Shown: one piece after another, positions 48,850 through 61,720 of the stretch | Layout: each line of letters starts with the position of its first letter | Numbering within the stretch: the first letter of the stretch is position 1 | Assembly: GCF_048593235.1 (NCBI RefSeq) | Contig: NC_133617.1 | Location: 13,211,607-13,275,606, forward strand | Reading direction: 5' to 3' | DNA: 64,000 bases | Source of the DNA: Sminthopsis crassicaudata | Lineage: Eukaryota | Notes under the pieces: generated by a model | Databases searched by the model: none | What the model was told of the DNA's origin: nothing | Seen by the model: the letters and a program-made list of their open reading frames with translations, nothing else | Made by a program: the position numbers and the translations under genes

Positions 48850-50050
48850 TTCTGGCCCAAGAAGATTTTCGGGCGCCTCTCCCTGTTCCCATGTAGCCCC
48901 CAAGGCCCGGGTCGCGTTGCGCCGTAGCGGCCGTGTGGGAACTCGAACCCAGGCCCCCGGGCGCGGGGCCGACCTCGCTTCCTGCGCTCCCCCATCTCCC
49001 CGCCATCCCCGGCCCCAGCCATGGACCACAAGATCCTTGAAGTCCAGAGGTTCCTGGAGGACGGCTCTTTTCCGGACCACTTGGTGACCGCTTCCCAGAA
49101 GCGAGAGTTCCGCAGGCGGGCCCAGAACTTCGTCCTGGAAGGTGAGGGGGGGGCGGCTGCGGATTATCCGCTCCCAGCGTCCTGGGGCTCCCGACCACCC
49201 GATCCCGGTGGGGGCTCCCTGAGGGCGCGCAGGAGCGGAGCCTGAGACTCGGAAGTCGAGCCCAGCCGGCCATGGAAGGAGAGAAAAATTGGGTGGGGGT
49301 GGGGGGCAGCAGCCGCTGGGCTGGCCTGGCTGCAAGCTAGAATGTGTGAAAGGCATCCGTGCGTAGGCGGCCTCGCCTGGAGGCAGCTCGTGAAGGCTGC
49401 GCGAGGCCCAGCGGGCTCTCTGACCCTAAAAACAGTGGGAGCCACGGCAGGTTCTAGAGGGAGGGGAACGCTCTGACTCGGGTTTTGGACTTAAGCGTGG
49501 AGGCGGCGAGGGGCCGCCTGGAGGCCCGAGGGCAGACTGGTCTCCCCGCCCCCTTCCGGAAGGGTGGCGGGCGTCTCCGCTGGCTAAAGTTCGGGCCGAA
49601 CCCCGAGGGAGCGAGCGGCGGGGCCCGCGGCCCGGCCTCGTTTCCAGCCCGAATCTCCGGAAGTGCGCGAGGCCCGGAGCTAGCGCCGGCCCGCCCCCGC
49701 CTCGGCCTGGCTGCTGGAAGTGACCTCAGCGGTCTCCTGGGCCCGCCCGCCCCGCCCCCTCCATTAACGCTGCGCCTCGGGGCGAGGGGGCGGCGCGGGC
49801 GCGTCTGGGGTGGGATCCTCGCGCCGCGCTTCCCGCGGCTCCTGGGGCCGCGGGGCCTGCGCTCCGGCCCCTCCCCCCGCCCGGGTCCCACAACTCTCCC
49901 GTGGAGGTTCCTGGAGCGCGTGTCGCCCCTCCCCCCGGGCGCGGCACCGTGGGCTGGGGGGGAGGGGGGGAGGAGCAGGCTTCTGGGGCCGGGATCCGAG
50001 GGCAGTTTGAAAGTGTCCCGACCCCGCCGTCGTTTTCTGAGTCCCCCAAG
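48850..50050 (+). promoter_or_regulatory. CpG island over the first coding exon and intron 1 of the integrase-like gene
   Basis: CpG-dense; Kozak ccagccATGG at 49021; ETS CCGGAAGT at 49657; palindromic CTTCCGGAAG at 49553; GC boxes near 49690. Confidence 0.7.
49021..49141 (+). CDS. GIN-like gene coding exon 1 (121 nt, phase 1)
   Basis: ATG ... GAAG|gtgagg; MDHKILEVQRFLEDGSFPDHLVTASQKREFRRRAQNFVLE. Confidence 0.8.
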
Positions 50051-53000
50051 CCCCCCCGGCAGCCAGCTCCGGACAGTTGTAGCTCCCTGGTTGGATGGCA
50101 GTGGGGGCTCCCGCTCTCAGTTCTTAGATCCTGGAGTGGTGGGATGGGGGGAGGGAGGGACGTGTGAGACGCACAGACGCACCCAGTGGGAGGGGCTGCT
50201 GGGATAGGCTGGCTGGGAGCCCCCTCACTTTGCCTTCATCCTCTCAGTTGCTCCACTTCTGTGTTCCAGAAAGCAGAAGAGGACCCTCCCCCCGGTCCGG
50301 CTCTTCCCCCCCTCCTCACCCCCCCTCGTCCGGCTCTACCCCCTCCCCCAGCCTGCTCCTCTCCCCGGGGCCTCGTGTCCCCCCTCCCCCTCTGCTCCCC
50401 CTCATTTTCTCCTTTTGGGACTCTCTCCTAATAGAATCACTCCAATTCCGTGCTGCTCCTTCCCTTCCAAGCTAGCCTCCCCCCCATGGGGACTATGGGA
50501 GAAAATCCCTCTCCGCAGGCCGGGAGGGGGGCACTCGGGGCCTGAGTTTTCCCTCTCCGCCGCACTGTAACCGCACCCAAGTTGTTGTGAAGATGGAGCC
50601 GGTACCCTAGGCTGGGAGAAGGCCTTTGGGGGTGCCAGTCCCCCATCCATGTGTCCCCTGGCCGAGGCCGGACCCTCCAGAGGGGGAGCGGCCCCCTCCT
50701 CCTCCCTCCCTCTGCTCTGAGGGTGAGATAAGAATTAAACAGCAGGCCTGGGCGGGCCCAGCATTTCCCCGTCCAAGGAAACTGAGGCTCAGAGAGGTGG
50801 GGAAGGGGCTTGGCTAAGTCCCAGGGTTTACATCCAGGGTCCCTGACTCCAAACCAGCCCCACTCCCGTTCCCTCCCCCTCCTCTCGGTCCCGGCCCTCA
50901 CCTGCTCCCTGGATGCTGGATCTGCCCTGATTACTCGGCCTTCTTCCCATGTCTCCTCCCTGGCAGCCACAAGCTCCCAGGAAAACTCCAGCCTGCCCCA
51001 TTAATCTCCATTCTGGCCGTCTGGCTTTCTGGTCTACCACTCGATTGCTCCCCGTGTGTTTATTGAATTAAGTTAAATTAATATACATTAATAAATAGTG
51101 AATAACTAATTAATATTAAGTTAAGTACAATCTCTGCCTATATCCCTCGCTGAAGGGACTCTACAGAGGGGGGGGGGCAAAGTCCCATGTCCAGGAGTAA
51201 CATAACCCACAGAGGCTGGAATGGAGCTCCCCATCCCTCTCCCCTCTGACTGATGGCAGCTAGGGGGCGCCATACTGCGTGGAGCCCAGGATTGGGAATC
51301 AAAACCTACTCTGATCAATCAGACATTTAGGGACCCAGCCCAGGAGGTCACTTCACTCTCTTTGCCTCCGTGTTCTCATCTGTAAAATGGGCGGAAGAAG
51401 GAATTGTAAATCCAGTCCAGTGTCTTTGTCAGAAACACTCTCCCCGATCTAACGATTTTGCTCGATTCCCGGGACTGGTTTCCCGTAGAACTGAGGGCTC
51501 CCGTGGCGGGAGGTACAGAGCGACCCGGAGACCTAGAGGAACCTTTCAGAGCAGTTAGCATAAGCAAAGTCGCGCTAACGACTGTCCGAGGTGACGTCGG
51601 ACAGGGGCCGTGTTCGGACTCTCGGCTCCACAGCCGGCTTTCTCTCTTTCTTTCTTTCTTTTTTTAAAGCTTTTTATTTTCAAAACATGGGCAGATGATT
51701 TTTCAGCTGCCCTTGCAGAGCTGCATGCCCCTAGTTTTCCCCTCCTTCCCCCACCCCCTCCCCCGGATGGCAGGTAGTCCCATACGTCCAGCACGTGTTA
51801 CCCATTTAGGCAGTTATCTTGTCCAGTATTCTTCCCAGCACACCGGGGTGGGGCCATTAGGCACCCCTTTGCCTGCATGGATGGGGGAGCTCACCCTGGC
51901 TGCCTCCCCCTCAGACTGGGCTCTCCTTCCCCAGGGGAGGGTCTGGAATTGTTCCCTGGGGGGGTTCCTTCCCCAGGGGAGGGTCTGAGTCACCCTTTTG
52001 GGGAGGGTTTCCCCCCAGGGGAGGAGGGTTGGGGTCAGTGTCTTGGGGGGAGGGGCTCCTTCAGTAACCAAGGCATCTCCTCTGCAGACCACAACCTGAT
52101 GTTCGTCCGTCTGGGCAAGAAGTCTCTGGTGGTGCTGGACCGGAAGGACCGCCTGGAGCTGGTGAAGCAGGCGCACGTCACCTCCTCCGGCCTGCATTGC
52201 TCCCTGCAGGAAACCAGGAAGAAGGTCTCCTTCAGCTACTACTGGCCCAGCCTGGACCGAGATGTCAGCAAGTGGGTCAGTGGAGGAGGGTCCCGGGCGG
52301 GGCAGGGGGCGGCTCCCGGAAAGGAGAGACCCCGAGAACCTCGGACTCCTGCGCGCTTGTCTTCCTGCAGGAAGCCTCAGTTTACTCATCTCTAGAATGG
52401 GAGGCGTTAAGTCTTTCACTCATTCTCTGCTTTTCTGCGCTCATCTCTGCCTGGAGAGCCTCTTGGCCAGTGAGCTTTCCCTTGTGGGAACAGGAACAAA
52501 ATCCAGGCGGGATCCTCCTCCCTGCTGGGCCCGTACTTGGTCATTATTATTCCTCGGGGGTCGCTCCCCGTTCTGCCCATTAGCTGTGCACTCCCTCCTT
52601 TCCCAGGGTTGGGAAAATTGAATGAGATCATACTTGTTAAAAGGACTTATTGCCACAATGTCCAGCACACAGTAGGCACTTAATAAATGCTTACTCCCTT
52701 CCGTTATAATCGTTGCAAATGCAGCTTCCGGTTCTCTTTCCTTCCTTCACATAAGTCTACCTGAGATTCTTCTCGAGCCTTTGCTCACTACTTTTTGTGA
52801 TTTGCTCAGCCAGTCCCCAGACCACGGGCACCTGGCTTTGTTTCCAGGCTTCCCCAGGTCAGCTCTGAATGTTTTGGTATAAATGGGGTCTTTTTTGACT
52901 TCTAGGGGTTCATACAAACAATTTTTTACAGAAGGGGAAAACTGAGGTTCAGGAGAAGAGACTTGTTCAAACTCGGCATCACTGGGGGTCTAGGGAGGGA

Positions 53001-56000
53001 GCTTCTCCATCCCTCCACACTGCTTCATGGGGGCTTCCTCCTTGGGCCCATCTCAGGGATTGAGGGTGAGGTGGGTGGGGGCAGACCTTAGGGCGTTCTC
53101 TTGGAGGCTCTTCGCCCTTTTTTGTGCCTGGTAAAGATCCCAGCGGGTCCCGGCTGCTTGGGATCCCAGCGTGGCAACCCCCACAGTCTCACCCCTCTCG
53201 CCACAGGTCAAGCAGTGTAACTGCCGCCAGAAGGCGTGTTCAGAGAAGTCTCTGCCCATCCAGGTAACGGTCCCAGGGGGGCGGGGGACAGGAAGGCAGG
53301 GCGGCCCCGCTGCCACGGTGGGCTTCTGGCTGGCTGGTCCTCCTGGACTCCCCCCAAAGAAAGAGAGAATCTTGATCTTGGGGACAGAATCTGAGCTTGA
53401 CGGTCTTGCTCCGTGGGACCTTGGCCAGATCCCTTGTCCATTCCCCAAATGAGAGGCGGCGGGTGGGCCCTAACCCTAAGAGACGGTAGCTGGATGTCTT
53501 GCCCCCTGGGGATCCTGCCCTGAGGGGTCTGGGATGGATGGGCACATGGACGGTCCTCTTCTCCACAGGGGGTCAGCAGCAAGAGCCAGCGCGCTAGGGA
53601 CCCGTTGCCCGTGCTCCAAGTGGAAGCGGTAAGTAGGTGGGGACGGGGAGGAGAGGCGAGAAGGACCCGGCTCTGAGCCGGGCACGCCACAGATAGTGTC
53701 TCCTTTGGGCTCCTCAGCACCCTGGGAGGGGATCTGTCACGATCCCCATTTTAGTTAAGGAACATTGCACAACTAGTGAGTGTCGGAGTCTGCATTTGAA
53801 CTTGGGTGGCCTTGGTTCCAGGGCTAGTGCTCGATCAGCCAGTGGCTCAGGCTCTGCCCTTATACAGCGTGAGCCCGGAGACCTGCCTCCTACCCTTTCC
53901 CAGAGGGGCTTTGGAACACTCGGGCCTGGGGAAGTGCATGGGAGCCGCTGTCGGCCATCTTCCCCTCCTCGCTCCCCCGTCCCGGTCCAGGATTTTAGGC
54001 CCTCTGGGTGACTTTTTATAAGTCTCCCGACCTCTTCCCCTCAGGTCACTCAGGCTTTTGAGCAGGTGGGCCTGGGCCTGGTGGGGCCCCTGATGGAGAC
54101 TGCCAACGGCTTCCGCTTCATCCTTTTGTCCGTGGACGCTTACTCCCGGTGGGTCGAAGCCTCACCACTAAAGGAACAAAATCCCGTGGAAGTGGCCAGC
54201 GCCCTGATCCCCTTCCTCCTCCGATTTGGACGTCCCCAGCTCCTGGTCACCACTCTTCGAGTTCCATTTGTGAGCCAGGTGAGTCAGCTATCCGCCCCCC
54301 CCTCCCATCCAGAGCAGGCTGGGTTCTCCCCCTTGTAATCTAGAACAGGATCCCCACCCCCTTCTAGAATTGGAGTTCTGCCCCCTCCCTGCTCTAGAAC
54401 AGAAAGGCTAGGCTGAGGGAGGGGGGGCCAGGCTGAGGGAGGGGGGCCAGGCTGAGGGGGGGGGCTAGGCTGAGAGAAGGAGGCCAGGCTAAGCGGGGGG
54501 GGGGGGGGGGGGTAGGGCTGAGCTCCTCCTGTTCTTGCCTTCTGAAACTCACGTGGTTCCCCCACAGTGCCCCTGGGGTCAGCCTCAGATCATTTCCCTT
54601 CCTGCCCCCTTAAGCCCTCTAGTCTCCATGGCTCCCCACACCCTCCCCTGCAACCCGCCATCTCTCCTTCCACGGCCACCTTTCCAGACCCTCAAGGCTC
54701 CTTTTCAGTGACCCCTGTCCCCTGCAGGTGAACCGGAGTCTCCATCGCCAGCTCCAGGGCTTGGGGGTGCCCCTTGGCAAGCTGGACATCATCGTGTCGG
54801 CGTTCCAGCCGAAGATCAATAGCATCGTGTCCCTGACCGCCAGCTCTGTTAGGAGGTGAGGACGGGCCGGCCCCGGTCTCTGGTCTCACCGGACCTGCTG
54901 CCCACAGAGAAGCCGGGGAGAGCGAGGAAGAGAGCTGGTCCTTATCAGCTCTGGGGGAACCCAATCCCAAGTGGTAGAGCTGGATTGGAACCCAGACCCC
55001 CTTATGGTTAGAGGGGCTAGGGGTGGAGAAAAAGGGAGAATCTGAGAAAACGGGGGTGGCGAGGTGATGGCCGAGGCTGAGCTTGACAAAACCTGTCCTG
55101 GGCTTCGGGGTGTGGCGCGGGATGGCACTCAGGGGGATTGGCACGGTCGGGTGAGAAGAGCCCTGCACTGGGGACCAGAAGGCTGAAGTTAAAATCCTAA
55201 TCCTGCCCTCCACTGGCTGGGAGAAGAAGCATAGAAATCCCTTCGGATGCCTCAGTTTCTTTATCTGTAAAATGGGTAGGGGAGGGGGCTGTTACTGAGC
55301 TGAAGGTATCCTGACTTGGGATGATTTAGGAAATTGAGGATGTGGTGGGGGAGAGGGTCCGTTCCCGCGGCCCTAACTAAGAGAGCTCCTGGCTGCTTTC
55401 AGGGCCCTGTGGAGCCTGGTGAAGGGGGAGCTGGAGAAGTGGGACCAGGTCTTGGACAGAGCCCTTTTCTCCCTGAGGACGGCCGTGACTAAGAACAAGA
55501 GGAAAAGTCCCTTCCAGTTACTTTATGGTCGCAAGCCCAGGGCCCCTCAGGACGTTCCCTCCTATTTTGACGTGAGTGCTGGGCTCCTGGCTCCTCGGCG
55601 CATTCTACGCTGCAGGCCGCCTCTCCTGGCTGGGTCTCCCGGGTCCCGCTGCGCCGAGAGCTGCTTCCTCTCCTTGACCGCTGGTTCTCTCGCCTGCCGT
55701 TAGCCTTTCCTTCTCCTGACCCTGACCCCCAACTCTGGGGCCCCTCCAAAAGGATTCACACCCAGAGCATTAGGATTTGAGCATCTGGGACCCAGAGCAG
55801 GTTACTTGAGACCCACGCCACCCAAATGCCCTTTGTGGGCCGGGGGCAGCAGCCTGGCCTGGGTTCTCATCTCCTCGTGCCTTGGCTTGAGCCAGCTCCC
55901 TTCGGTCAGCTCCCATTCATAAGTATGAGGAGGGGGCTCCCTGCCCTGGCCTTTCTCCTTCCTTTACTTTGCAGCATTTTCTGGAGTTCAGATAAACATG

Positions 56001-57281
56001 GAGGGTTAGCAGGAGGGGCATTGGGCCGGAGCTTAGAATACCTGGGTTCCCGAAGGATTCTCTGTAGAACTGGTGGCCAGTGACTATCTATAGTTACCAT
56101 GACCCCCTCCCCTCTGTGACCTTCTCTCCTCCGTGTACCTCCAGGTGGTTGCAGCAGACACCGTGGGGGACAGTGCAGGGGCTACCCATGGTGATAAAAG
56201 GCCCATGGGTGCAGCATCTGCACCAAAAGCCGTGGGGCAGCAACCGAAGCGACAGATCATCCGAGAGCCCACTCTACAGGTCATGGCGAAGCCCGGTGTG
56301 AAGCCGGTCCAGCAGCCCGTGCCAGAGCCCATCCAGCAGCCCGTGCCAGAGCCCATCCAGCAGACCGTGCCGGAGCCCGCCCAGCAGCCTTTAATGAAGT
56401 CCATCCAGCAGCCCATGCCGGAGCCCGTGTTGGAGCCCTCTCAGCAGCCCTTAATGGAGCCTGCCCAGCAGCCCTTAATGGAGTCCATCCAGCAGCCCAT
56501 GCCAGAGCTCACCCAGCAGCCCATGCCGGAGCTCACCCAGCAACCCATGCCGGAGCTCGTCCTGCAGCCCGTGCCGGAGTCCTCCCAGCAGTTTGTGTTG
56601 GAGCCCTCCCAGCAGCCCATGCTGGAGCCCTCTCAGCAGTTCGTGTTGGAGCCCTCCCAGCAGTCCATATCAGAATCCAGACAACCATCCAGGCCAGAGA
56701 CCATGGGGCAGTTCATGCATCAGCTCATACCAGAGCCCATGAATCAGCATATGTGGCAGCCCATGCTGGGGGCCATCAACCAATCTATGCAGCCCATCCA
56801 GCAGCTCATGCAGCAGACCATGCAACAGTCCATGATCCAGTCTCTCCAGCAGCCCATGCATCAGCCCATTCAGCAGCTCATACTTCAGCCCATGCAGCAG
56901 CCCATGATGGAGTCCATCCAGCAACCCCTGCAGCAGCCCCTGCACCAGTCTATGCAGCAGCCCATGCTGCAATCCATGCAGCAGCCTATCCAGCAGGCCA
57001 TGCCCCAGCCCATCCAGCAGCCCATGCAGCAGGCCATGCCCCCACCCATCCAACGGCCCATACCCCAGTCTGTGCCGTGGCCCATGGCCCAGCCTATCCA
57101 GCAGCCCCTGCAGCAGCTCATCCTGGCAAAACCTATGCATCCACCCATCCCCAGGCTGGCAGAATGTCCTGTGGTGAGCGGCTGGGACCAACGGACAACT
57201 CCCAGCCTCGACAACCCCTGGGAAAAGTGGGAGCCTGGTGGAGGAGCCTTCTGGACTCAATGGAGGGAGCCTGGCAACTAG
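49021..57281 (+). CDS. Domesticated GIN/Ginger (Gypsy-integrase-like) gene with dead DDE core and Q/P/M-rich repeat tail, 677 aa
   Basis: join(49021-49141,52088-52275,53207-53263,54045-54278,54728-54855,55403-55571,56145-57281) = 2034 nt, six GT-AG introns with matching phases and no internal stop. Integrase hallmarks: H-x6-H...YYWPSLDRDVSKWVKQC; GPL..T.NG.RFILLSVDAYSRWVEASPL; RFGRPQ; WDQVLDRALFSLRT...SPFQLLYGRKPR. Confidence 0.88.
52088..52275 (+). CDS. GIN-like gene coding exon 2 (188 nt; HH half of the Zn finger)
   Basis: ctgcag|ACCAC ... TGG|gtcagt; DHNLMFVRLGKKSLVVLDRKDRLELVKQAHVTSSGLHCSLQETRKKVSFSYYWPSLDRDVSKW. Confidence 0.88.
53207..53263 (+). CDS. GIN-like gene coding exon 3 (57 nt; CC half of the Zn finger)
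   Basis: ccacag|GTCAAG ... CAG|gtaacg; VKQCNCRQKACSEKSLPIQ. Confidence 0.8.
54045..54278 (+). CDS. GIN-like gene coding exon 4 (234 nt; core N-half)
   Basis: ccctcag|GTCACT ... CAG|gtgagt; VTQAFEQVGLGLVGPLMETANGFRFILLSVDAYSRWVEASPL...PFVSQ. Confidence 0.9.
54728..54855 (+). CDS. GIN-like gene coding exon 5 (128 nt, phase 2)
   Basis: ctgcag|GTGAAC ... AGGAG|gtgagg; VNRSLHRQLQGLG...VSAFQPKINSIVSLTASSVR. Confidence 0.82.
55403..55571 (+). CDS. GIN-like gene coding exon 6 (169 nt)
   Basis: ctttcag|GGCCCTG ... GAC|gtgagt; ALWSLVKGELEKWDQVLDRALFSLRTAVTKNKRKSPFQLLYGRKPRAPQDVPSYFD. Confidence 0.9.
56145..57281 (+). CDS. GIN-like gene terminal exon (378 aa; QQP[MVL]xE / QQPM repeats)
   Basis: Pyrimidine tract plus ctccag|GTGGTT, in phase 0 with exon 6; 1137 nt open to TAG (ORF track 56133-57281). 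Confidence 0.8.
   Translation: MVAADTVGDSAGATHGDKRPMGAASAPKAVGQQPKRQIIREPTLQVMAKPGVKPVQQPVPEPIQQPVPEPIQQTVPEPAQQPLMKSIQQPMPEPVLEPSQQPLMEPAQQPLMESIQQPMPELTQQPMPELTQQPMPELVLQPVPESSQQFVLEPSQQPMLEPSQQFVLEPSQQSISESRQPSRPETMGQFMHQLIPEPMNQHMWQPMLGAINQSMQPIQQLMQQTMQQSMIQSLQQPMHQPIQQLILQPMQQPMMESIQQPLQQPLHQSMQQPMLQSMQQPIQQAMPQPIQQPMQQAMPPPIQRPIPQSVPWPMAQPIQQPLQQLILAKPMHPPIPRLAECPVVSGWDQRTTPSLDNPWEKWEPGGGAFWTQWREPGN
56304..57122 (+). repeat. Coding tandem repeat, 24-nt then 12-nt units (CAGCAGCCCATG core)
   Basis: ccagcagccc(a/g)tgcc(a/g)gagc repeated; unit lengths are multiples of 3. Confidence 0.9.
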
Positions 57282-57689
57282 TGGGAGAAATCAGAAACTC
57301 TTTTCCATTTCTAAATTCAATTAGATGACTAATCCTTGGGGGTGGGGGTGGGGAGGGGGAATAGAAAGCGGTCTTGGGAATGAACCATAATTGCTCCCAT
57401 CCACAATGACCCAAAGTCTGGGTCTGGGTATGAGAACGGGGCCAGGCATCTTGGACATTGTTACCCCCGTGGCCCATCCTTCCCTTCATTTGTGCCGAAT
57501 GTTGGGAAACGGGGACAAAAACAAAAGCCTCTGTCCTCACTAGGCTTTTATTCTACTGGGAAGAATGGAGTTAAACCATTGTTCCATCCATCAAGAGGTC
57601 ATCAGTCACCTTTTATGTTCTGGTCCCTGGGCTGCTGGGTCATTGGAGAGTGCAGCGATGAGCCCTGCCTTCACATTATTGGGAAAATG

Positions 57690-58290
57690 GACAGATAGAC
57701 GGGGGTTCCCAAAAGTCTTAGTGCAGCTTTAACCTATTACAACTTTTTAAGATTTTTGGGACACTCTGAAGAAAATTGATTGATAAGAGGGTGGTTGGAT
57801 GTAGCAGGGAAGGAAGAAAGTGAGAGTCGAGACTTCTGGGAAAACAACGCGTGTGAAGTAAAGGGTTTTCTAGGCAGGGTCAAAGACTGTTATGTGGACC
57901 TGGGGCGCTGGGTATGTCCGGACCAACAAGAAAACGAGTTTGGGGCTGGAAAGGTGGTTAGATCCAAGTTGAGGTAATGGGGAGCTGTGGAAGTTGCTGG
58001 AGTAATAGCAGCTACTCAGATCAATAAATAATTGGGAGGAGGAAAGCTCTCCTATGGGAGATGGTACCTAGGGCAAGTCTTGAAAAGGTGGGAGTGAATT
58101 TGGAAGTTCTAAGCAGGCTAGGTAGGGCCTGTGCAAAGACTGCAGCAAGCATCCAATTCGGGGAGAAGTACGGAGCCAGTTGTTTGGCTGGAAGAGAGGG
58201 TTTGGGCAAAGGATGCAAAAAGGGGAAAGAGGGGGTGAGTTGCAGAGAGCAGCAGAGACCTAGTCCATCACTGCTGATTATCACATGATC
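57690..58290 (-). mobile_element. L2 ORF2 relic
   Basis: Purine-rich + strand typical of antisense L2; degenerate - strand ORF at 58021-58302. Confidence 0.45.
58023..58028 (+). terminator. Candidate poly(A) signal for the GIN-like gene
   Basis: First AATAAA I found downstream of the 57281 stop; lies in repeat-like sequence. Confidence 0.3.
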
Positions 58291-59012
58291 TTGTAACTGC
58301 ATACAATTTTCTCTTGATTCTGCTCACTTTACTCAGCATCAGTTCATGTAAGTTTTTCCAGGCTTTTCTGCCGTCAGCCGCTCCTCAATAATCCATTTTT
58401 ATACCATAACACATGGACCATAATGTATTCACGTACCATGTGCCATATACCATAATGTATTCAACCATTCCCCAACTGATGGGCATTCACTCAATTTCTA
58501 CTTCCTTGCCGTCACAAAAAGATCTGCTCCAAGATGATCTTTTTCCTTTTTCTTTTTTTAAACTTTGTTTTTTAAATAGGGGTATAGTTTCCAACATTTC
58601 ATCTTTGCAAAACATTGTGTTGATAATCTTTATGAAGAGGATCAATGAGATCACAGGGCGGGCGATGACTCCCCACAGGAACTGGATCTAAGTGTGAAAG
58701 AGTCATATCGGCAGCCCGAGCTCCTTTTTATAAATTTCTGGGTGTTTTTTTCCTGTTATACCTACACATTTTAAAAATACACAATTCTTCATGAATATGT
58801 CGGGAAAGACAAATAACAGAAGGGGAGAAAAACCCCCAAAGTTGAACCTCGCATGTGTTGATTTACATGCAGTCTCCATAGTTTCTCTGTCTGGACGCGG
58901 ATGGCGTTTTCCATCCAAAGTTTATTGGGATGGACTTGGATCACTGAACTGCAGAGAAGAACCAAGTCTTTCCTAGTTGACGGATCGTTCCTGGTTCTGC
59001 TTGTTCAGCCTT
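58290..59012 (-). mobile_element. Two L1 3'-region fragments (about 58290-58530 and 58720-59012)
   Basis: ttctgctcactttactcagcatcagttcatgtaag...aaccattccccaactgatgggca and ggatcactgaactgcagagaagaaccaagtc...cctggttctgc match reverse L1 3' motifs. Confidence 0.65.
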
Positions 59013-60779
59013 GGTTCCGGAGTCACTAAGGGCCAGTGGCAAAGCCAGAACGGCAGGTTTCCACGCAGTGGATGACCTCGGTATCTCCACTCGGTGGCTG
59101 TTGGAACGAAATTTTCTCATCTCTTCCCTTCTTGCAGAAGTCTTCCCACACTAAGGTCCACAGGGGCTGATTCGGCCAATGGGGGAAGTCTTGGGCTGTA
59201 CATCCTAAGTCGTAGATGCCCTTGAAAGTTGCTTTAACCTCTGCTGAGATGGGGTCCCTGGGCACGGCCGCCTTGGTAGGTGGGCACATTTGGCACATAA
59301 GGACCAACGCCTCTGGTGGCCTACTTTCTATACCCCGGACTTGACATAGGCTCGAACTGGTGCCCATTTGGGTGAACAAAAGAGGGGTGAGTTTGAAAAA
59401 TGGGCACGATGGCTCCGGCCAGGACCAGGAGACGGGCCACATCCATGGACGACCTAGAGCCTGCAAAACTTGGACCACAGACTGAATTTCATGTGTAGCA
59501 ATCGGGTAAAAGGGGGAAAGATGAGATAATAAATATGAGATCCTTCGGAACGACCCGGGTTTCTGCAAACTTGGTAGTGGGGATCTTATGCAATGATCCC
59601 TAAAACATTGTCATATGAGACATAACGGGGAGGTGAGTTACTGTGTCACTGGGAAGAGAGGTAGGGGTCAGAGGTCGGGGCCTCTCTCAGGCTCTGTCCA
59701 GGCCTGCCGTTTCATTTGTCTGAGTGGCCCCTGAGGACTCTGGATCCCAGGAAACCTCGGGGGAGCATGGGCCAGGCTGGGCCCAGGTGGGGGAGGGACA
59801 GCGGGCTGTATGGCACTGTAGTTACGGGATTGGGGGGGGGGGATTTGGAGGGAGCCGTTTTACTTGGCCGGGTCCCAGGAAGCAGATTGTTCTGAAGGAG
59901 CTGATGAGCCAGTGCGAGCGGAGGAAGTGGAGCCATGGACTGGGCTGCAGTTCTATGAGTTTGGCTGTGCAGGGAAGGAGATGGGAGGCTGAGGGAGTGG
60001 CTGAGTCAAGTGGAGGCTCAGAAGGTGAGGGGAGCTGAGCAGAATTAGTTGGGGGCAGGAAGGGAGGAGCCTGGAGGGGCCTTTAGAGGAAAATATGGGG
60101 GAATGGAAACCCCTGAGCCCGCGGGGTGAAGGACGGCCGGGGTGTCGCCAGCAGGAGAGGAAGGGCTTATTTTGTCCAAAGTCAAGGCCTCTGCTGAGTT
60201 GGGGAATAAGAAGGGGGCGAGGCCTGGGAGGCTGGAGGAGAGACAGGTTTTGGACATCGAGGCCGAATGGAGGGAACAGACGGCAGCAGAGGAGATACCG
60301 GCGATGGGATCCCGTGGAGGCAGGCTCCAGGTCTGGGATCTGCAGGACGGATCCTTGGCTGGAGGAGGAGGGGGAGCCAGGATTCTCTACCCTCCCCCTA
60401 GCCTGGGGCCAATGGGAAGCGCTGGAGTCCCGACCCCTCTTGGGACGGGGAAGTGGGAGGACCCTTGGGCCTGAGAGCTCGGCCCATCTGCCGCCCCCGC
60501 TGGACGTCGGGTTCTTCCCCAGAGTAACCCCCTAGATGCCCCCTTGTGCTTTTCCCATTACTTTATCCGGATGCCGACCTGCCAGTCAGCCGTGGGTTGG
60601 ACTCCGGGAAGGTGGGGAAAGCCTCCCCAGTGAGGGCGGTGGAGGCGCTGCGACTTTCTGCCTCCGTCCTTTTTCGCTCTTAGGCCCCACTTCCGTCCTG
60701 GGCCTCAGTTTCCCCAGCTAAAGTGGAGTTAGTTGCTGGGCCTGTGGCCTCGGCTTCTGGGAAAGAAGCCTCCCAGTCA

Positions 60780-61720
60780 GCGGGGGAGGGCGGGGCCCAG
60801 AGAGCCGAGGGGGCGGGCCCGCGGATCCCGGATCCAGGCGGCGGGGCGAGCGGAGCCGGGGCCCGGACGGGGCCGTTCGCGGGGTTCGAGGGAGCCAGCG
60901 CGGGAGCCCCCGGCCGCGCCGTCTGCGGCCCGAATCTCCCCAGCCTGGGCGTGGCCGGTCCAACGAGCCCAGAGCGACCCCCGCGGGACCCCTGCGCGCC
61001 CCTGCAGGCTCCCGGCCGGCCTCCCAGGGTTCCCGGACGTCGCTTTGCGTGGCTGGAACCCGGGCACCCGGTACACGCGTGGGGCCCGCCTCCTCCCCCC
61101 TAGCCTCTCCCCCCCCCATTCCAGAAGGGCCAGCCAGCGGGGGCGTGGCCCGGAGAGTGTGGCTCGAGGATTGGCTGGCCCCGAGGGTTCTGAGGGGGCG
61201 GGGCCAGTGCCGGGGAGTTTCAGGGGGCGTGGCGTGGGCCCGGGCGCTCCGAGGGGGCGGGCCGGGAGCTCCTGCAGCCGCCGCCGTCGCCGCCGCCGCA
61301 GCCGGAGGAGGAGGATCCGGGGCCTGGCGCTGGCTGGGCGGCTGTGGGGCCCGGCAGCAGCAGCCGCCGCCGCCTCGGCGGCCCCTCGCTCCTCCTCCTC
61401 CTCCTCCTCGGAGCGGCCTCCTCCCTGCCCGGGCCTCGGGCTCGGCGCGCCCATGGAGCTGCACATCCTGGAGCACCGGGTCCGGGTGCTGAGCATCGCG
61501 CGCCCCGGACTCTGGCTCTACACGCACCCGCTTGTCAAGCTGCTCTTCCTGCGGCAGCGGAGCCGGTAAGGCGAAGGCCGGGGGCGCGGGGGCCTGCCCG
61601 CCCCCGGGCCCCTCCCTGCCGGGGCTGGGGGGGGGGCAGAGAAGCCCGTCCCCCCGCCCTCCAGCCCTCTGTCTCCGCTGCTCCCCGAGCCCGCTCCGCA
61701 CCCCGGATCATCCCCACTTT
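60780..61720 (+). promoter_or_regulatory. CpG-island promoter of CASTOR1
   Basis: CpG-dense; ATTGG at 61170; several GGGGCGG/GGGGCGTGG boxes at 61140-61263; GCC-repeat 5' UTR; Kozak gcccATGG. Confidence 0.85.

What the first reader, a model, noticed from the sequence alone, without database searches (positions are those of the whole stretch)
56145..57281. Integrase C-terminus replaced by a roughly 270-aa Gln/Pro/Met low-complexity repeat domain
Seen: instead of a GPY/F C-terminal module, the last exon encodes a short basic linker (KRPMG...PKRQIIR), then 8-aa units (QQP[VML][PM]E[PLS]x) grading into 4-aa units (QQPM/QQSM), then a Trp-rich end (GWDQ...PWEKWEPGGGAFWTQW). Repeat expansions are all multiples of 3, so the frame stays open for 1.1 kb, as expected if it is translated. 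Inference: a disordered, prion-like or condensate-forming or transactivation tail fused to a nucleic-acid-binding scaffold, probably length-polymorphic.
Basis: partly seen in the sequence, partly recalled or inferred. Interest (0 to 1): 0.72.

Follow-up and report, generated by a model that had tools for sequence, protein, structure and literature searches.

The report
Repeat tail on marsupial dead integrase
The last exon of a marsupial-only gene derived from a transposon integrase really does encode a long, fast-changing glutamine/proline/methionine repeat tail. The tail ends in a strictly conserved tryptophan-rich motif, so it is very probably a translated, flexible docking arm whose partner is unknown.

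Summary
Window 56145-57281 is the last exon of fat-tailed dunnart (Sminthopsis crassicaudata) gene LOC141557864, XP_074150294.1, 697 aa. NCBI's model uses the same 55571->56145 junction.

The gene has 8 coding exons, not 7. It lies between TBC1D10A and CASTOR1. Its GIN/Ginger1-type integrase has lost all three DDE residues and has no GPY/F module.

The tail has five parts:
- a linker
- array A, 24-nt units
- a 33-aa island
- array B, 12-nt units
- a 51-aa Trp-rich end

An open frame alone proves nothing, because all three forward frames are open across the arrays. The real evidence is comparative. Six marsupials spanning the opossum-Australian split keep the tail in frame. Array lengths vary (A 33-148 aa, B 88-115 aa), while island and end keep their exact length. 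The core PWEKWEPGGGAFWTQWR is almost invariant. dN/dS is 0.12 for the end against 0.45-0.64 for the arrays. Two opossum records differ by one 8-aa unit.

A "prion-like" reading is not supported: 20% proline, almost no N/G/Y.

No RNA evidence could be obtained. The function is inferred: a disordered spacer carrying conserved short docking motifs. I found no paper on this gene.

The parts
49021..49141 (+). Coding exon 1 (start codon ATG at 49021), the N-terminal GIN-type region
   Evidence: GT donor. 95% identical to Sarcophilus and Antechinus. Matches residues 1-40 of XP_074150294.1.
52088..52275 (+). Coding exon 2: the His-His half of the integrase zinc finger
   Evidence: Pfam Integrase_H2C2, E 1e-9 on the ORF and 2e-11 on the whole protein. 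AG/GT splice sites.
53207..53263 (+). Coding exon 3: the Cys half of the zinc finger, with C-x-C spacing
   Evidence: C107 and C109 are invariant in marsupials.
53569..53628 (+).
   Evidence: AG acceptor and GTAAGT donor. 95-97% identical to the two other dasyurids. Present in all orthologue models.
54045..54278 (+). Coding exon 5: integrase core. The first catalytic Asp is Gly and the second is Thr.
   Evidence: Alignment with GIN-like relatives. Weak Pfam rve match.
54728..54855 (+). Coding exon 6: integrase core. The catalytic Glu position is substituted. The donor AGG|TGA gives an immediate stop if the intron is retained.
   Evidence: The Antechinus models end exactly here.
55403..55571 (+). 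Coding exon 7: last integrase-core exon, ending ...PQDVPSYFD
   Evidence: 96% identical to the other dasyurids.
55572..56144 (+). Last intron (GT...AG). If retained it gives a stop at 55701-55703.
   Evidence: 88.5% identity to Sarcophilus; 1 of its 9 indels is a multiple of 3.
56145..56237 (+). Tail, linker (31 aa). The first 9 residues, VVAADTVGD, are nearly invariant in marsupials.
56238..56681 (+). Tail, array A (148 aa): about 8-aa units such as QQPMPEPx. Acidic, net charge -9.
   Evidence: TRF period 24. Length is 33-148 aa across five species, with lineage-specific units. dN/dS 0.45.
56682..56780 (+). Tail, conserved island (33 aa, QPSRPETMGQFMHQLIPEPMNQHMWQPMLGAIN)
   Evidence: Same length in five species with 14 invariant columns. 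dN/dS 0.28.
56781..57125 (+). Tail, array B (115 aa): 4-aa units QQPM/QQSM/QQPI. Uncharged; 36% Q, 18% P, 13% M.
   Evidence: TRF period 12 x 27.8 copies. Length is 88-115 aa across species. dN/dS 0.64.
57126..57278 (+). Tail, conserved Trp-rich C-terminal end (51 aa), with core PWEKWEPGGGAFWTQWR
   Evidence: Fixed length. The core is invariant apart from one A/V change in six marsupial species. dN/dS 0.12. Found only in the marsupial orthologues.
57279..57281 (+). Stop codon TAG
58023..58028 (+). First + strand AATAAA after the stop: a candidate poly(A) signal, inferred only
   Evidence: The 3' flank 57282-57800 is 91% identical to Sarcophilus, above the intron level.

Best explanation
56145-57281 is a genuine, translated last coding exon of a gene found so far only in marsupials. 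The gene is a catalytically dead GIN/Ginger1-type integrase (dunnart LOC141557864). After the integrase core, where active relatives carry a GPY/F SH3-like module, the protein continues into a 378-aa tail that is probably intrinsically disordered. Two Q/P/M-rich tandem arrays grow and shrink by replication slippage or unequal exchange in whole 12/24-nt units. Their unit sequence has been replaced separately in each lineage. Selection appears to keep only the reading frame, the composition and the approximate length. The arrays separate and present two short conserved segments: a 33-aa island and a 51-aa Trp-rich C-terminal end built from two W-x-x-W half-motifs around a Gly-Gly-Gly hinge. I infer that these segments are short linear docking motifs for a protein partner. 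I infer that the proline-punctuated Q/M arrays act as a flexible, weakly self-associating spacer or multivalent interaction surface. On this reading the tail links the zinc-finger plus RNase-H-fold nucleic-acid-binding scaffold to other machinery, most likely in chromatin or transcription. Shown: the exon structure, the repeats, frame conservation, the gradient of constraint and the length variation. Inferred: translation (no RNA or peptide data), disorder, the docking role and the cellular process. The confidence given applies to the whole statement; that the exon is coding and under selection I hold at about 0.85, the docking-arm mechanism at about 0.4.
For: Canonical splice sites and an uninterrupted frame across all exons. 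NCBI or Ensembl-derived models in Sminthopsis, Sarcophilus, Petaurus, Notamacropus and Monodelphis join the integrase exons to the tail at the same junction. Conserved synteny upstream of CASTOR1 in six species, with a RabGAP-TBC gene further upstream. Island and C-end have identical length in five species while array A spans 33-148 aa and array B 88-115 aa. The last 19-aa core is invariant but for one A/V change. dN/dS between Sminthopsis and Sarcophilus: C-end 0.12, island 0.28, arrays 0.45-0.64. In the arrays the second codon position changes least: 33/14/38 differences at positions 1/2/3, chi-square about 11 by my arithmetic. About nine indel events among three dasyurids are all whole codons, whereas only 12 of 69 indels in the gene's introns are multiples of 3. 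Splice sites and the tail ORF are intact in Antechinus DNA as well. The C-end occurs nowhere else among proteins of 383-1220 aa. No GPY/F match or remnant. The arrays are low-entropy and proline-rich, and no secondary structure is predicted.
Against: In Antechinus, NCBI ends all three integrase isoforms at the exon-6 donor read-through and annotates the last core exon plus the tail as a separate 448-aa gene. Tail-less and tail-only products therefore cannot be excluded. Slippage in 12/24-nt units yields in-frame indels by mechanism, so that argument is only partly independent of selection. Nucleotide identity of the whole tail to Sarcophilus (about 89%) is close to intron level (82-88.5%), so the arrays are only weakly constrained. 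Both AlphaFold models are low-confidence, so 'disordered' is not demonstrated. No partner, localisation or activity is known. Koala, wombat and brushtail-possum orthologues were not retrieved.
Confidence: 0.6

Rival explanations
1. The repeat stretch is a non-coding GC-rich minisatellite in a 3' UTR or intergenic DNA. It is merely open in every frame, and gene predictors read it through by mistake.
For: All three forward frames and the minus strand have long open stretches over the arrays. Substitution rate in the arrays is close to intron level. Automatic names are inconsistent, for example 'probable inactive serine/threonine-protein kinase'. No RNA data.
Against: The 51-aa end is reached in the same frame in six species despite many array indels. 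It is conserved from opossum to dunnart with dN/dS 0.12. The acceptor site and the first nine codons are conserved. Second codon positions are spared.
Confidence: 0.05
2. The tail is mainly made as a separate protein (last core exon plus tail) from an internal promoter, while the integrase part is made as a tail-less product ending at the exon-6 donor. The fusion would then be a minor or artefactual isoform.
For: Antechinus annotation: three integrase isoforms end at ...SSIRR, which is exactly the AGG|TGA read-through of the exon-6 donor. A separate 448-aa gene covers the rest. The same AGG|TGA donor exists in the window.
Against: Five other species' models are fused. The upstream ATG-containing ORF used in Antechinus is not open in the dunnart: the homologous open stretch (55155-55295) holds no equivalent start codon. 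Exon 7 encodes the conserved end of the integrase core, which would be an odd N-terminus on its own. There is no + strand AATAAA/ATTAAA between 52687 and 58023.
Confidence: 0.12
3. The tail is a prion-like, amyloid-forming Q-rich domain that drives heritable or irreversible aggregation.
For: 27% glutamine and low charge in array B.
Against: 20% proline, mostly spaced 2-8 residues apart, with a longest proline-free run of 19 aa. Only 2 N, 3 G and 0 Y in 277 residues. By general knowledge, proline disrupts cross-beta cores and yeast-prion-type domains are N/Q/G/Y/S-rich. PLAAC itself was not run.
Confidence: 0.04
4. The Met- and Gln-rich arrays form reversible condensates whose stability is tuned by methionine oxidation, as described for the Met-rich low-complexity domains of yeast ataxin-2 (Pbp1) and TDP-43.
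For: 10% Met in the repeat part and 13% in array B. Met stays enriched in array B of all five species, at 9-13%. The review PMC8394241 describes Met-rich LC domains whose condensates melt on oxidation.
Against: This is only a compositional analogy. In opossum array A, Met is 2% and is replaced by T/I/L. Those known domains form labile cross-beta structure, which the high proline content argues against here. No experiment exists.
Confidence: 0.1

Closest known systems
GIN2 (Gypsy integrase 2), a vertebrate gene domesticated from a GIN/Ginger1 DNA transposon (PMC3424704)
   Same: N-terminal GIN-type region, HHCC-type zinc finger and integrase core fold. Eight coding exons. Canonical DDE not conserved. 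Present in marsupials. Single copy at a fixed locus.
   Different: GIN2 lies between OGFOD2 and ABCB9 and keeps a GPY/F module (PMC3424704). This gene lies between TBC1D10A and CASTOR1, has no GPY/F, carries the Q/P/M repeat tail, has C-x-C rather than C-x-x-C in the finger, and was found only in marsupials. Identity to any non-marsupial GIN-like protein compared is about 27-32%.
GIN1 (Gypsy retrotransposon integrase-like protein 1)
   Same: Same superfamily. Several of the nearest non-marsupial profile hits carry this name automatically: carp, elephantfish, turtle, blenny and Hydra.
   Different: GIN1 is reported in mammals, birds and reptiles with the catalytic residues conserved (PMC3424704). 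Here all three catalytic positions are substituted, the C-terminus is different, and the distribution is marsupial-only in my searches.
Unnamed vertebrate GIN-like proteins lacking GPY/F: Paramormyrops LOC111861057 (P0017), a Bombina model fused to PPCDC (P0022), and a PHD-ended protein (P0016)
   Same: Among the best vertebrate profile hits (about 136-150 bits). The integrase homology ends at the same ...SPF.L.YGR...P.EVP boundary and is followed by an unrelated tail: long and disordered-looking, or a PHD finger.
   Different: They keep D, D and an acidic residue at the catalytic positions and a C-x-x-C finger. Their tails share nothing with the marsupial tail.
Gln-rich, hydrophobic-studded activation domains (Sp1 type) and Met-rich low-complexity domains (Pbp1/ataxin-2, TDP-43; PMC8394241)
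   Same: Low charge, Q-rich with regularly interspersed M/L/I, attached to a nucleic-acid-binding module. This is a functional analogy only.
   Different: No sequence homology. Much higher proline content and strict short-period tandem repeats. No functional data here. The Sp1 comparison rests on my own knowledge, not on a tool result.
SPRR/cornifin octapeptide-repeat proteins
   Same: 8-residue proline-punctuated repeats rich in Q, P and E. Weak Pfam match (PF02389, 22.9 bits).
   Different: The score is below the family's 34.8-bit cut-off. There is no Cys/Lys-rich pattern or cornified-envelope head and tail domains. The resemblance is compositional.

Membership tests
GIN/Ginger1-derived integrase genes (broad family) | HHCC (H2C2) integrase zinc-binding domain | tested here: met
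   Pfam PF17921, E 2.1e-11, 44 bits against a 25.5 cut-off. The Cys pair is C-x-C instead of C-x-x-C.
GIN/Ginger1-derived integrase genes (broad family) | Integrase (rve) core homologous to GIN/Ginger1 transposases, with the GIN-type N-terminal region | tested here: met
   The profile of the marsupial integrase part hits Lingula, fish, frog, turtle and Hydra GIN-like proteins from residue ~1 to ~315 at E 1e-45 to 1e-26. Aligned at 27-32% identity. Pfam rve itself is below threshold on this protein.
GIN/Ginger1-derived integrase genes (broad family) | DDE catalytic triad | tested here: not met
   D->G (GLGLVGP), D->T (LLVTTLRV) and E->non-acidic (NSIVSLT) in the alignment with relatives that keep D, D, E. 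Invariant among marsupials.
GIN/Ginger1-derived integrase genes (broad family) | C-terminal GPY/F (SH3-like) module | tested here: not met
   No PF24626 or other match at E<=1 on the tail or at E<=0.01 on the whole protein. tblastn with the C-terminal regions of the P0025 and P0026 proteins, which contain their GPY motifs, finds nothing in 55000-61000.
GIN2 | Orthologous position between OGFOD2 and ABCB9 (PMC3424704) | tested here: not met
   CASTOR1 exon 1 at 61459 (+) and TBC1D10A-type exons at about 37.4 and 38.8 kb (+) flank the gene. Castor1_N/ACT_7 lies downstream in five other species and RabGAP-TBC upstream in the tammar.
GIN2 | Eight protein-coding exons | tested here: met
   Eight exons with GT-AG borders. 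Correspondence of intron positions with GIN2 was not tested.
GIN1 | Conserved integrase catalytic residues and presence across amniotes (PMC3424704) | tested here: not met
   Catalytic positions are substituted. Close relatives were found only in marsupials, in a word search of 375-1195-aa proteins and a profile search where scores drop from 342 to 171 bits.
Yeast-prion-type (Q/N-rich) prion-like domain | Q/N, G, Y, S enrichment with few prolines and few hydrophobic residues | tested here: not met
   The repeat part is Q 27% but P 20% and M+L+I 24%; N 2, G 3 and Y 0 of 277 residues. The PLAAC algorithm itself was not run.
SPRR/cornifin | Pfam PF02389 above the gathering score | tested here: not met
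   22.4-22.9 bits against a cut-off of 34.8.
GW182/Ago-hook type W-motif platforms | Several GW/WG dipeptides conserved in a disordered region | tested here: not met
   Only one GW (dasyurids) or WG (diprotodonts) at one position, and neither in opossum (NWC). The other four Trp are flanked by P/E/K/F/T/Q/R. Binding was not testable.

The most novel reading that the evidence does not exclude
The tail is a marsupial-specific recruitment arm. The invariant double W-x-x-W end would insert its tryptophans into the pockets of a silencing or transcription complex, in the manner of W-motif proteins. The Q/P/M arrays would provide tunable reach or redox-sensitive self-association. A dead integrase that still recognises transposon-like nucleic acid would thereby bring that machinery to its targets. 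This would be a new way of re-using an integrase scaffold, evolved after GPY/F loss.
Probability: 0.1. Interest if true: 0.8.

Novelty: new variant of a known kind. Interest (0 to 1): 0.45.

Why it matters
Integrase-derived host genes (GIN1, GIN2, KRBA2, SCAND3, NYNRIN) are known, but none has an assigned molecular function. A 2013 survey lists only ten domesticated retroelement-type genes in marsupials, and this one is not among them (PMC3670739). Three properties make this gene informative:
- Its catalytic residues are gone, yet the core is 81-91% conserved across marsupials.
- The usual C-terminal module is absent.
- In its place is a fast-evolving repeat tail ending in a near-invariant motif.

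That pattern points to a non-catalytic scaffold-plus-adaptor role and gives a concrete handle, the W-rich end, for finding partners. It is also a clear natural case of selection keeping frame, composition and end-motifs while repeat units turn over. It may be useful for studies of how disordered regions evolve. It is not a new kind of system, and the gene is already present, unnamed, in public annotation.

Tried and rejected
- Full-length AlphaFold2 with a 5-sequence alignment gave pLDDT 32 even for the integrase core, so it is uninformative. A 70-residue C-end model gave pLDDT 58 and no secondary structure. No fold search was attempted on such models.
- PDB sequence search with the C-end found only chance hits, E 0.3 and above.
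- ESM Atlas feature search on the tail gave no usable hit.
- DNA of the Petaurus, Notamacropus and Monodelphis loci could not be fetched because the files were too large. K7E2S9 and the Antechinus X2 isoform were not on record. Codon analyses are therefore limited to three dasyurids.
- I considered that the W-rich end might be a decayed GPY/F module. I rejected this because no profile or tblastn signal supports it.
- I considered SPRR/cornifin membership and rejected it as below threshold and compositional.
- I considered a GW182-like Ago hook and found the motif rule not met.
- I considered a bipartite NLS in the linker and found that its basic residues are not conserved outside dasyurids.
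- Spliced model: I did not search with a joined spliced model. Exons were searched by reference, and the full-length protein used was the database record P0006. In one search a script concatenated the exons only to count length and stops; nothing joined was printed or sent to a search.
Full report
**What is at the coordinates**

Window 56145-57281 starts right after a polypyrimidine tract and an AG acceptor, and ends with a TAG stop. It translates into 378 residues:
- a 31-aa linker
- about 148 aa of roughly 8-residue units (QQPMPEPx type)
- a 33-aa non-repeat island
- about 115 aa of 4-residue units (QQPM/QQSM/QQPI)
- a 51-aa Trp-rich end

Tandem Repeats Finder reports period 24 at 56290-56389 and 56422-56668, and period 12 (27.8 copies) at 56789-57121. 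Every period inside the repeat arrays (56290-57121) is a multiple of three. The repeat part is 27% Q, 20% P and 10% M. Its sequence entropy is 2.5-2.95 bits, against 3.4-3.9 in the rest of the protein.

**The gene**

All exon borders are GT-AG and the frame runs without a stop from an ATG at 49021. The word search with the tail exon returned marsupial proteins that all combine an Integrase_H2C2 domain with such a tail.

One of them, XP_074150294.1 of Sminthopsis crassicaudata (LOC141557864, 697 aa), matches the window's tail residue for residue. The single mismatch in the BLAST output is the tool reading the first GTG codon as Met. So the window is dunnart DNA, and NCBI's model uses the same 55571->56145 junction.

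They are encoded by a 60-nt exon at 53569-53628 with proper splice sites, so the gene has eight coding exons.

CASTOR1 exon 1 lies at 61459 (+), and TBC1D10A-type exons lie at about 37.4 and 38.8 kb (+). The same order is seen at the orthologous loci of devil, antechinus, sugar glider, tammar and opossum.

**Family**

A profile of the marsupial integrase part, run against 1.84 billion representatives, scores 727-342 bits on marsupial proteins and then drops to 171 bits. The next hits are:
- a Lingula protein
- fish, frog and turtle proteins, most of them auto-named 'Gypsy retrotransposon integrase-like protein 1'
- Hydra, sea-cucumber and oyster proteins

These align at 27-32% identity from the N-terminus to the end of the core.

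In that alignment the three catalytic positions read G, T and a non-acidic residue in the marsupial proteins. The zinc finger's Cys pair is C-x-C. There are marsupial-specific insertions as well.

GIN2 is reported between OGFOD2 and ABCB9 with a GPY/F module, and GIN1 with conserved catalytic residues (PMC3424704). This gene meets neither description. A survey of domesticated retroelement genes lists ten for marsupials, without this one (PMC3670739). Two further literature searches found no description of it.

**Is the tail coding?**

The repeat unit has no stop in any frame. A second forward frame is open for 376 codons across the same stretch, and the third forward frame and the minus strand also have long open runs. 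The real evidence is comparative.

- *Conserved segments.* Five species from both marsupial superorders have tails of 279-378 aa. Array A ranges from 33 to 148 aa and array B from 88 to 115 aa. The island and the C-end have exactly the same length in all five. The Antechinus tail (357 aa, translated from L002) carries the same island and C-end. The C-end core PWEKWEPGGGAFWTQWR is invariant except for one A/V change. The first nine residues of the exon are almost invariant too.
- *Substitution rates.* With DNA from Sarcophilus (L001) and Antechinus (L002), the integrase exons are 86-98% identical to the window. Introns are 82-88.5% identical to Sarcophilus. Nei-Gojobori dN/dS between dunnart and devil is 0.12 for the C-end, 0.28 for the island, 0.45 and 0.64 for the arrays, and 0.64 for the linker.
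- *Codon positions.* In the arrays, second codon positions change least: 33/14/38 differences at positions 1/2/3 for dunnart versus devil. My arithmetic gives a chi-square of about 11 with 2 degrees of freedom.
- *Indels.* About nine indel events among the three dasyurids are all whole codons. Only 12 of 69 indels in the gene's introns are multiples of three. Slippage by 12/24-nt units would produce some of this without selection.
- *Motif distribution.* The C-end motif was found in no other protein of 383-1220 aa.

Together these results make a non-coding minisatellite very unlikely.

**Length variation**

The two opossum records, K7E2S9 from an older assembly and XP_056677480.1, are identical over their shared length except for one extra 8-aa unit in array A. 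This is either polymorphism or an assembly collapse. It fits the predicted length instability.

Unit sequences differ by lineage:
- QQPMPEPx in dasyurids
- RQQPMLEP/PMPEA in the sugar glider
- QQSTQQPI in opossum array A
- QPMTQSTY in diprotodont array B

The arrays therefore turn over by expansion of local variants. Q/P richness and, in array B, 9-13% Met persist.

**What the tail is likely to do**

Several observations fit an extended, disordered chain rather than a domain:
- no Pfam family above threshold; the weak cornifin match is compositional
- no PDB relative
- no predicted secondary structure, from models that are low-confidence
- prolines mostly 2-8 residues apart

The composition argues against a yeast-prion-type amyloid domain: high P, almost no N/G/Y.

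The gradient of constraint points to the island and the double W-x-x-W end as the functional elements. The arrays would then be a spacer or a weak multivalent surface.

My best reading is a flexible adaptor arm on a non-catalytic nucleic-acid-binding integrase scaffold. A transcriptional or chromatin role is plausible by analogy with Q-rich, hydrophobic-studded activation domains; that comparison rests on my own knowledge. Redox-tuned condensation is conceivable by analogy with Met-rich LC domains (PMC8394241). None of this is tested.

**'Replaced'**

There is no GPY/F signal in the tail or in 6 kb around it. However, the closest vertebrate relatives of the core also end their integrase homology at the same ...P.EVP boundary and continue with unrelated tails. 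These are Paramormyrops LOC111861057, a Bombina model and a PHD-ended protein. Loss of GPY/F may therefore predate the marsupial tail, or this boundary may be a recurrent site for new C-terminal exons.

**Caveats**

In Antechinus, NCBI ends all integrase isoforms at ...SSIRR. That is exactly what read-through of the exon-6 donor (AGG|TGA) gives. NCBI annotates the last core exon plus the tail as a separate 448-aa gene. The Antechinus DNA nevertheless has intact splice sites and an intact 357-codon tail. The extra upstream ORF used there is not open in the dunnart. Tail-less isoforms may well exist.

Orthologues from koala, wombat and brushtail possum did not appear in the searches, and I could not tell why.

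I searched exon by exon and with database proteins.

**Verdict**

The exon is very probably coding. The tail is a new C-terminal variant within the known class of domesticated GIN-type integrase genes. The gene is present in public annotation as an uncharacterised LOC, and I found no paper on it. Interest is moderate.

Noticed in passing
window 53569-53628: A 60-nt coding exon (GVSSKSQRARDPLPVLQVEA) lies between the zinc-finger exon and the first core exon. It encodes a marsupial-specific insertion relative to other GIN-like proteins.
   Followed up: yes
window 53207-53263: The Cys pair of the HHCC zinc finger is C-x-C (KQCNCRQK) in all marsupial orthologues. Relatives have C-x-x-C. Whether zinc is still bound is unknown.
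   Followed up: partly
window 54853-54861; L002 13560-13585: The exon-6 donor reads AGG|TGAGG, so intron retention stops translation at once. All three Antechinus isoforms in NCBI end exactly there, and the rest of the gene is annotated as a separate 448-aa gene.
   Followed up: partly
window about 51860-52060 (intron 1): A GC-rich imperfect repeat encodes PGEG/GRFPP-like units in an open frame just upstream of exon 2. In Antechinus a longer version of this repeat is annotated as the N-terminus of the protein (P0183, P0007) instead of exon 1. This is probably an annotation artefact.
   Followed up: no
P0004 versus P0182 (Monodelphis): The two opossum records differ by exactly one 8-aa unit (QQSTQQPI) in array A and by nothing else over the shared length. 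This is either a length polymorphism or an assembly collapse.
   Followed up: yes
window 57282-57800: The first 520 nt after the stop are 91% identical to Sarcophilus, higher than any intron of the gene (82-88.5%). This suggests a conserved 3' UTR. The first + strand AATAAA is at 58023.
   Followed up: partly
P0016, P0017, P0022 (profile hits): The nearest vertebrate relatives of the integrase part form a GPY/F-less group with the N-terminus MEKKWEE... and varied tails. One tail is a PHD finger, which recalls the integrase-PHD gene pair noted elsewhere in this genome. The Bombina model is fused to PPCDC, probably a read-through of neighbouring genes.
   Followed up: no
window 61459 onward (+) and about 37.4-38.9 kb (+): CASTOR1 exon 1 (MELHILEHRVRVLS...) sits in a GC-rich island of 74% GC. 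TBC1D10A-type exons (...[15 protein letters not shown]..., ...[20 protein letters not shown]...) lie upstream. All three genes are on the same strand.
   Followed up: partly
searches: No orthologue from koala, wombat or brushtail possum was returned, although these species have public annotations. The reason could be gene loss, assembly gaps in this GC-rich repeat, or the length filters.
   Followed up: no
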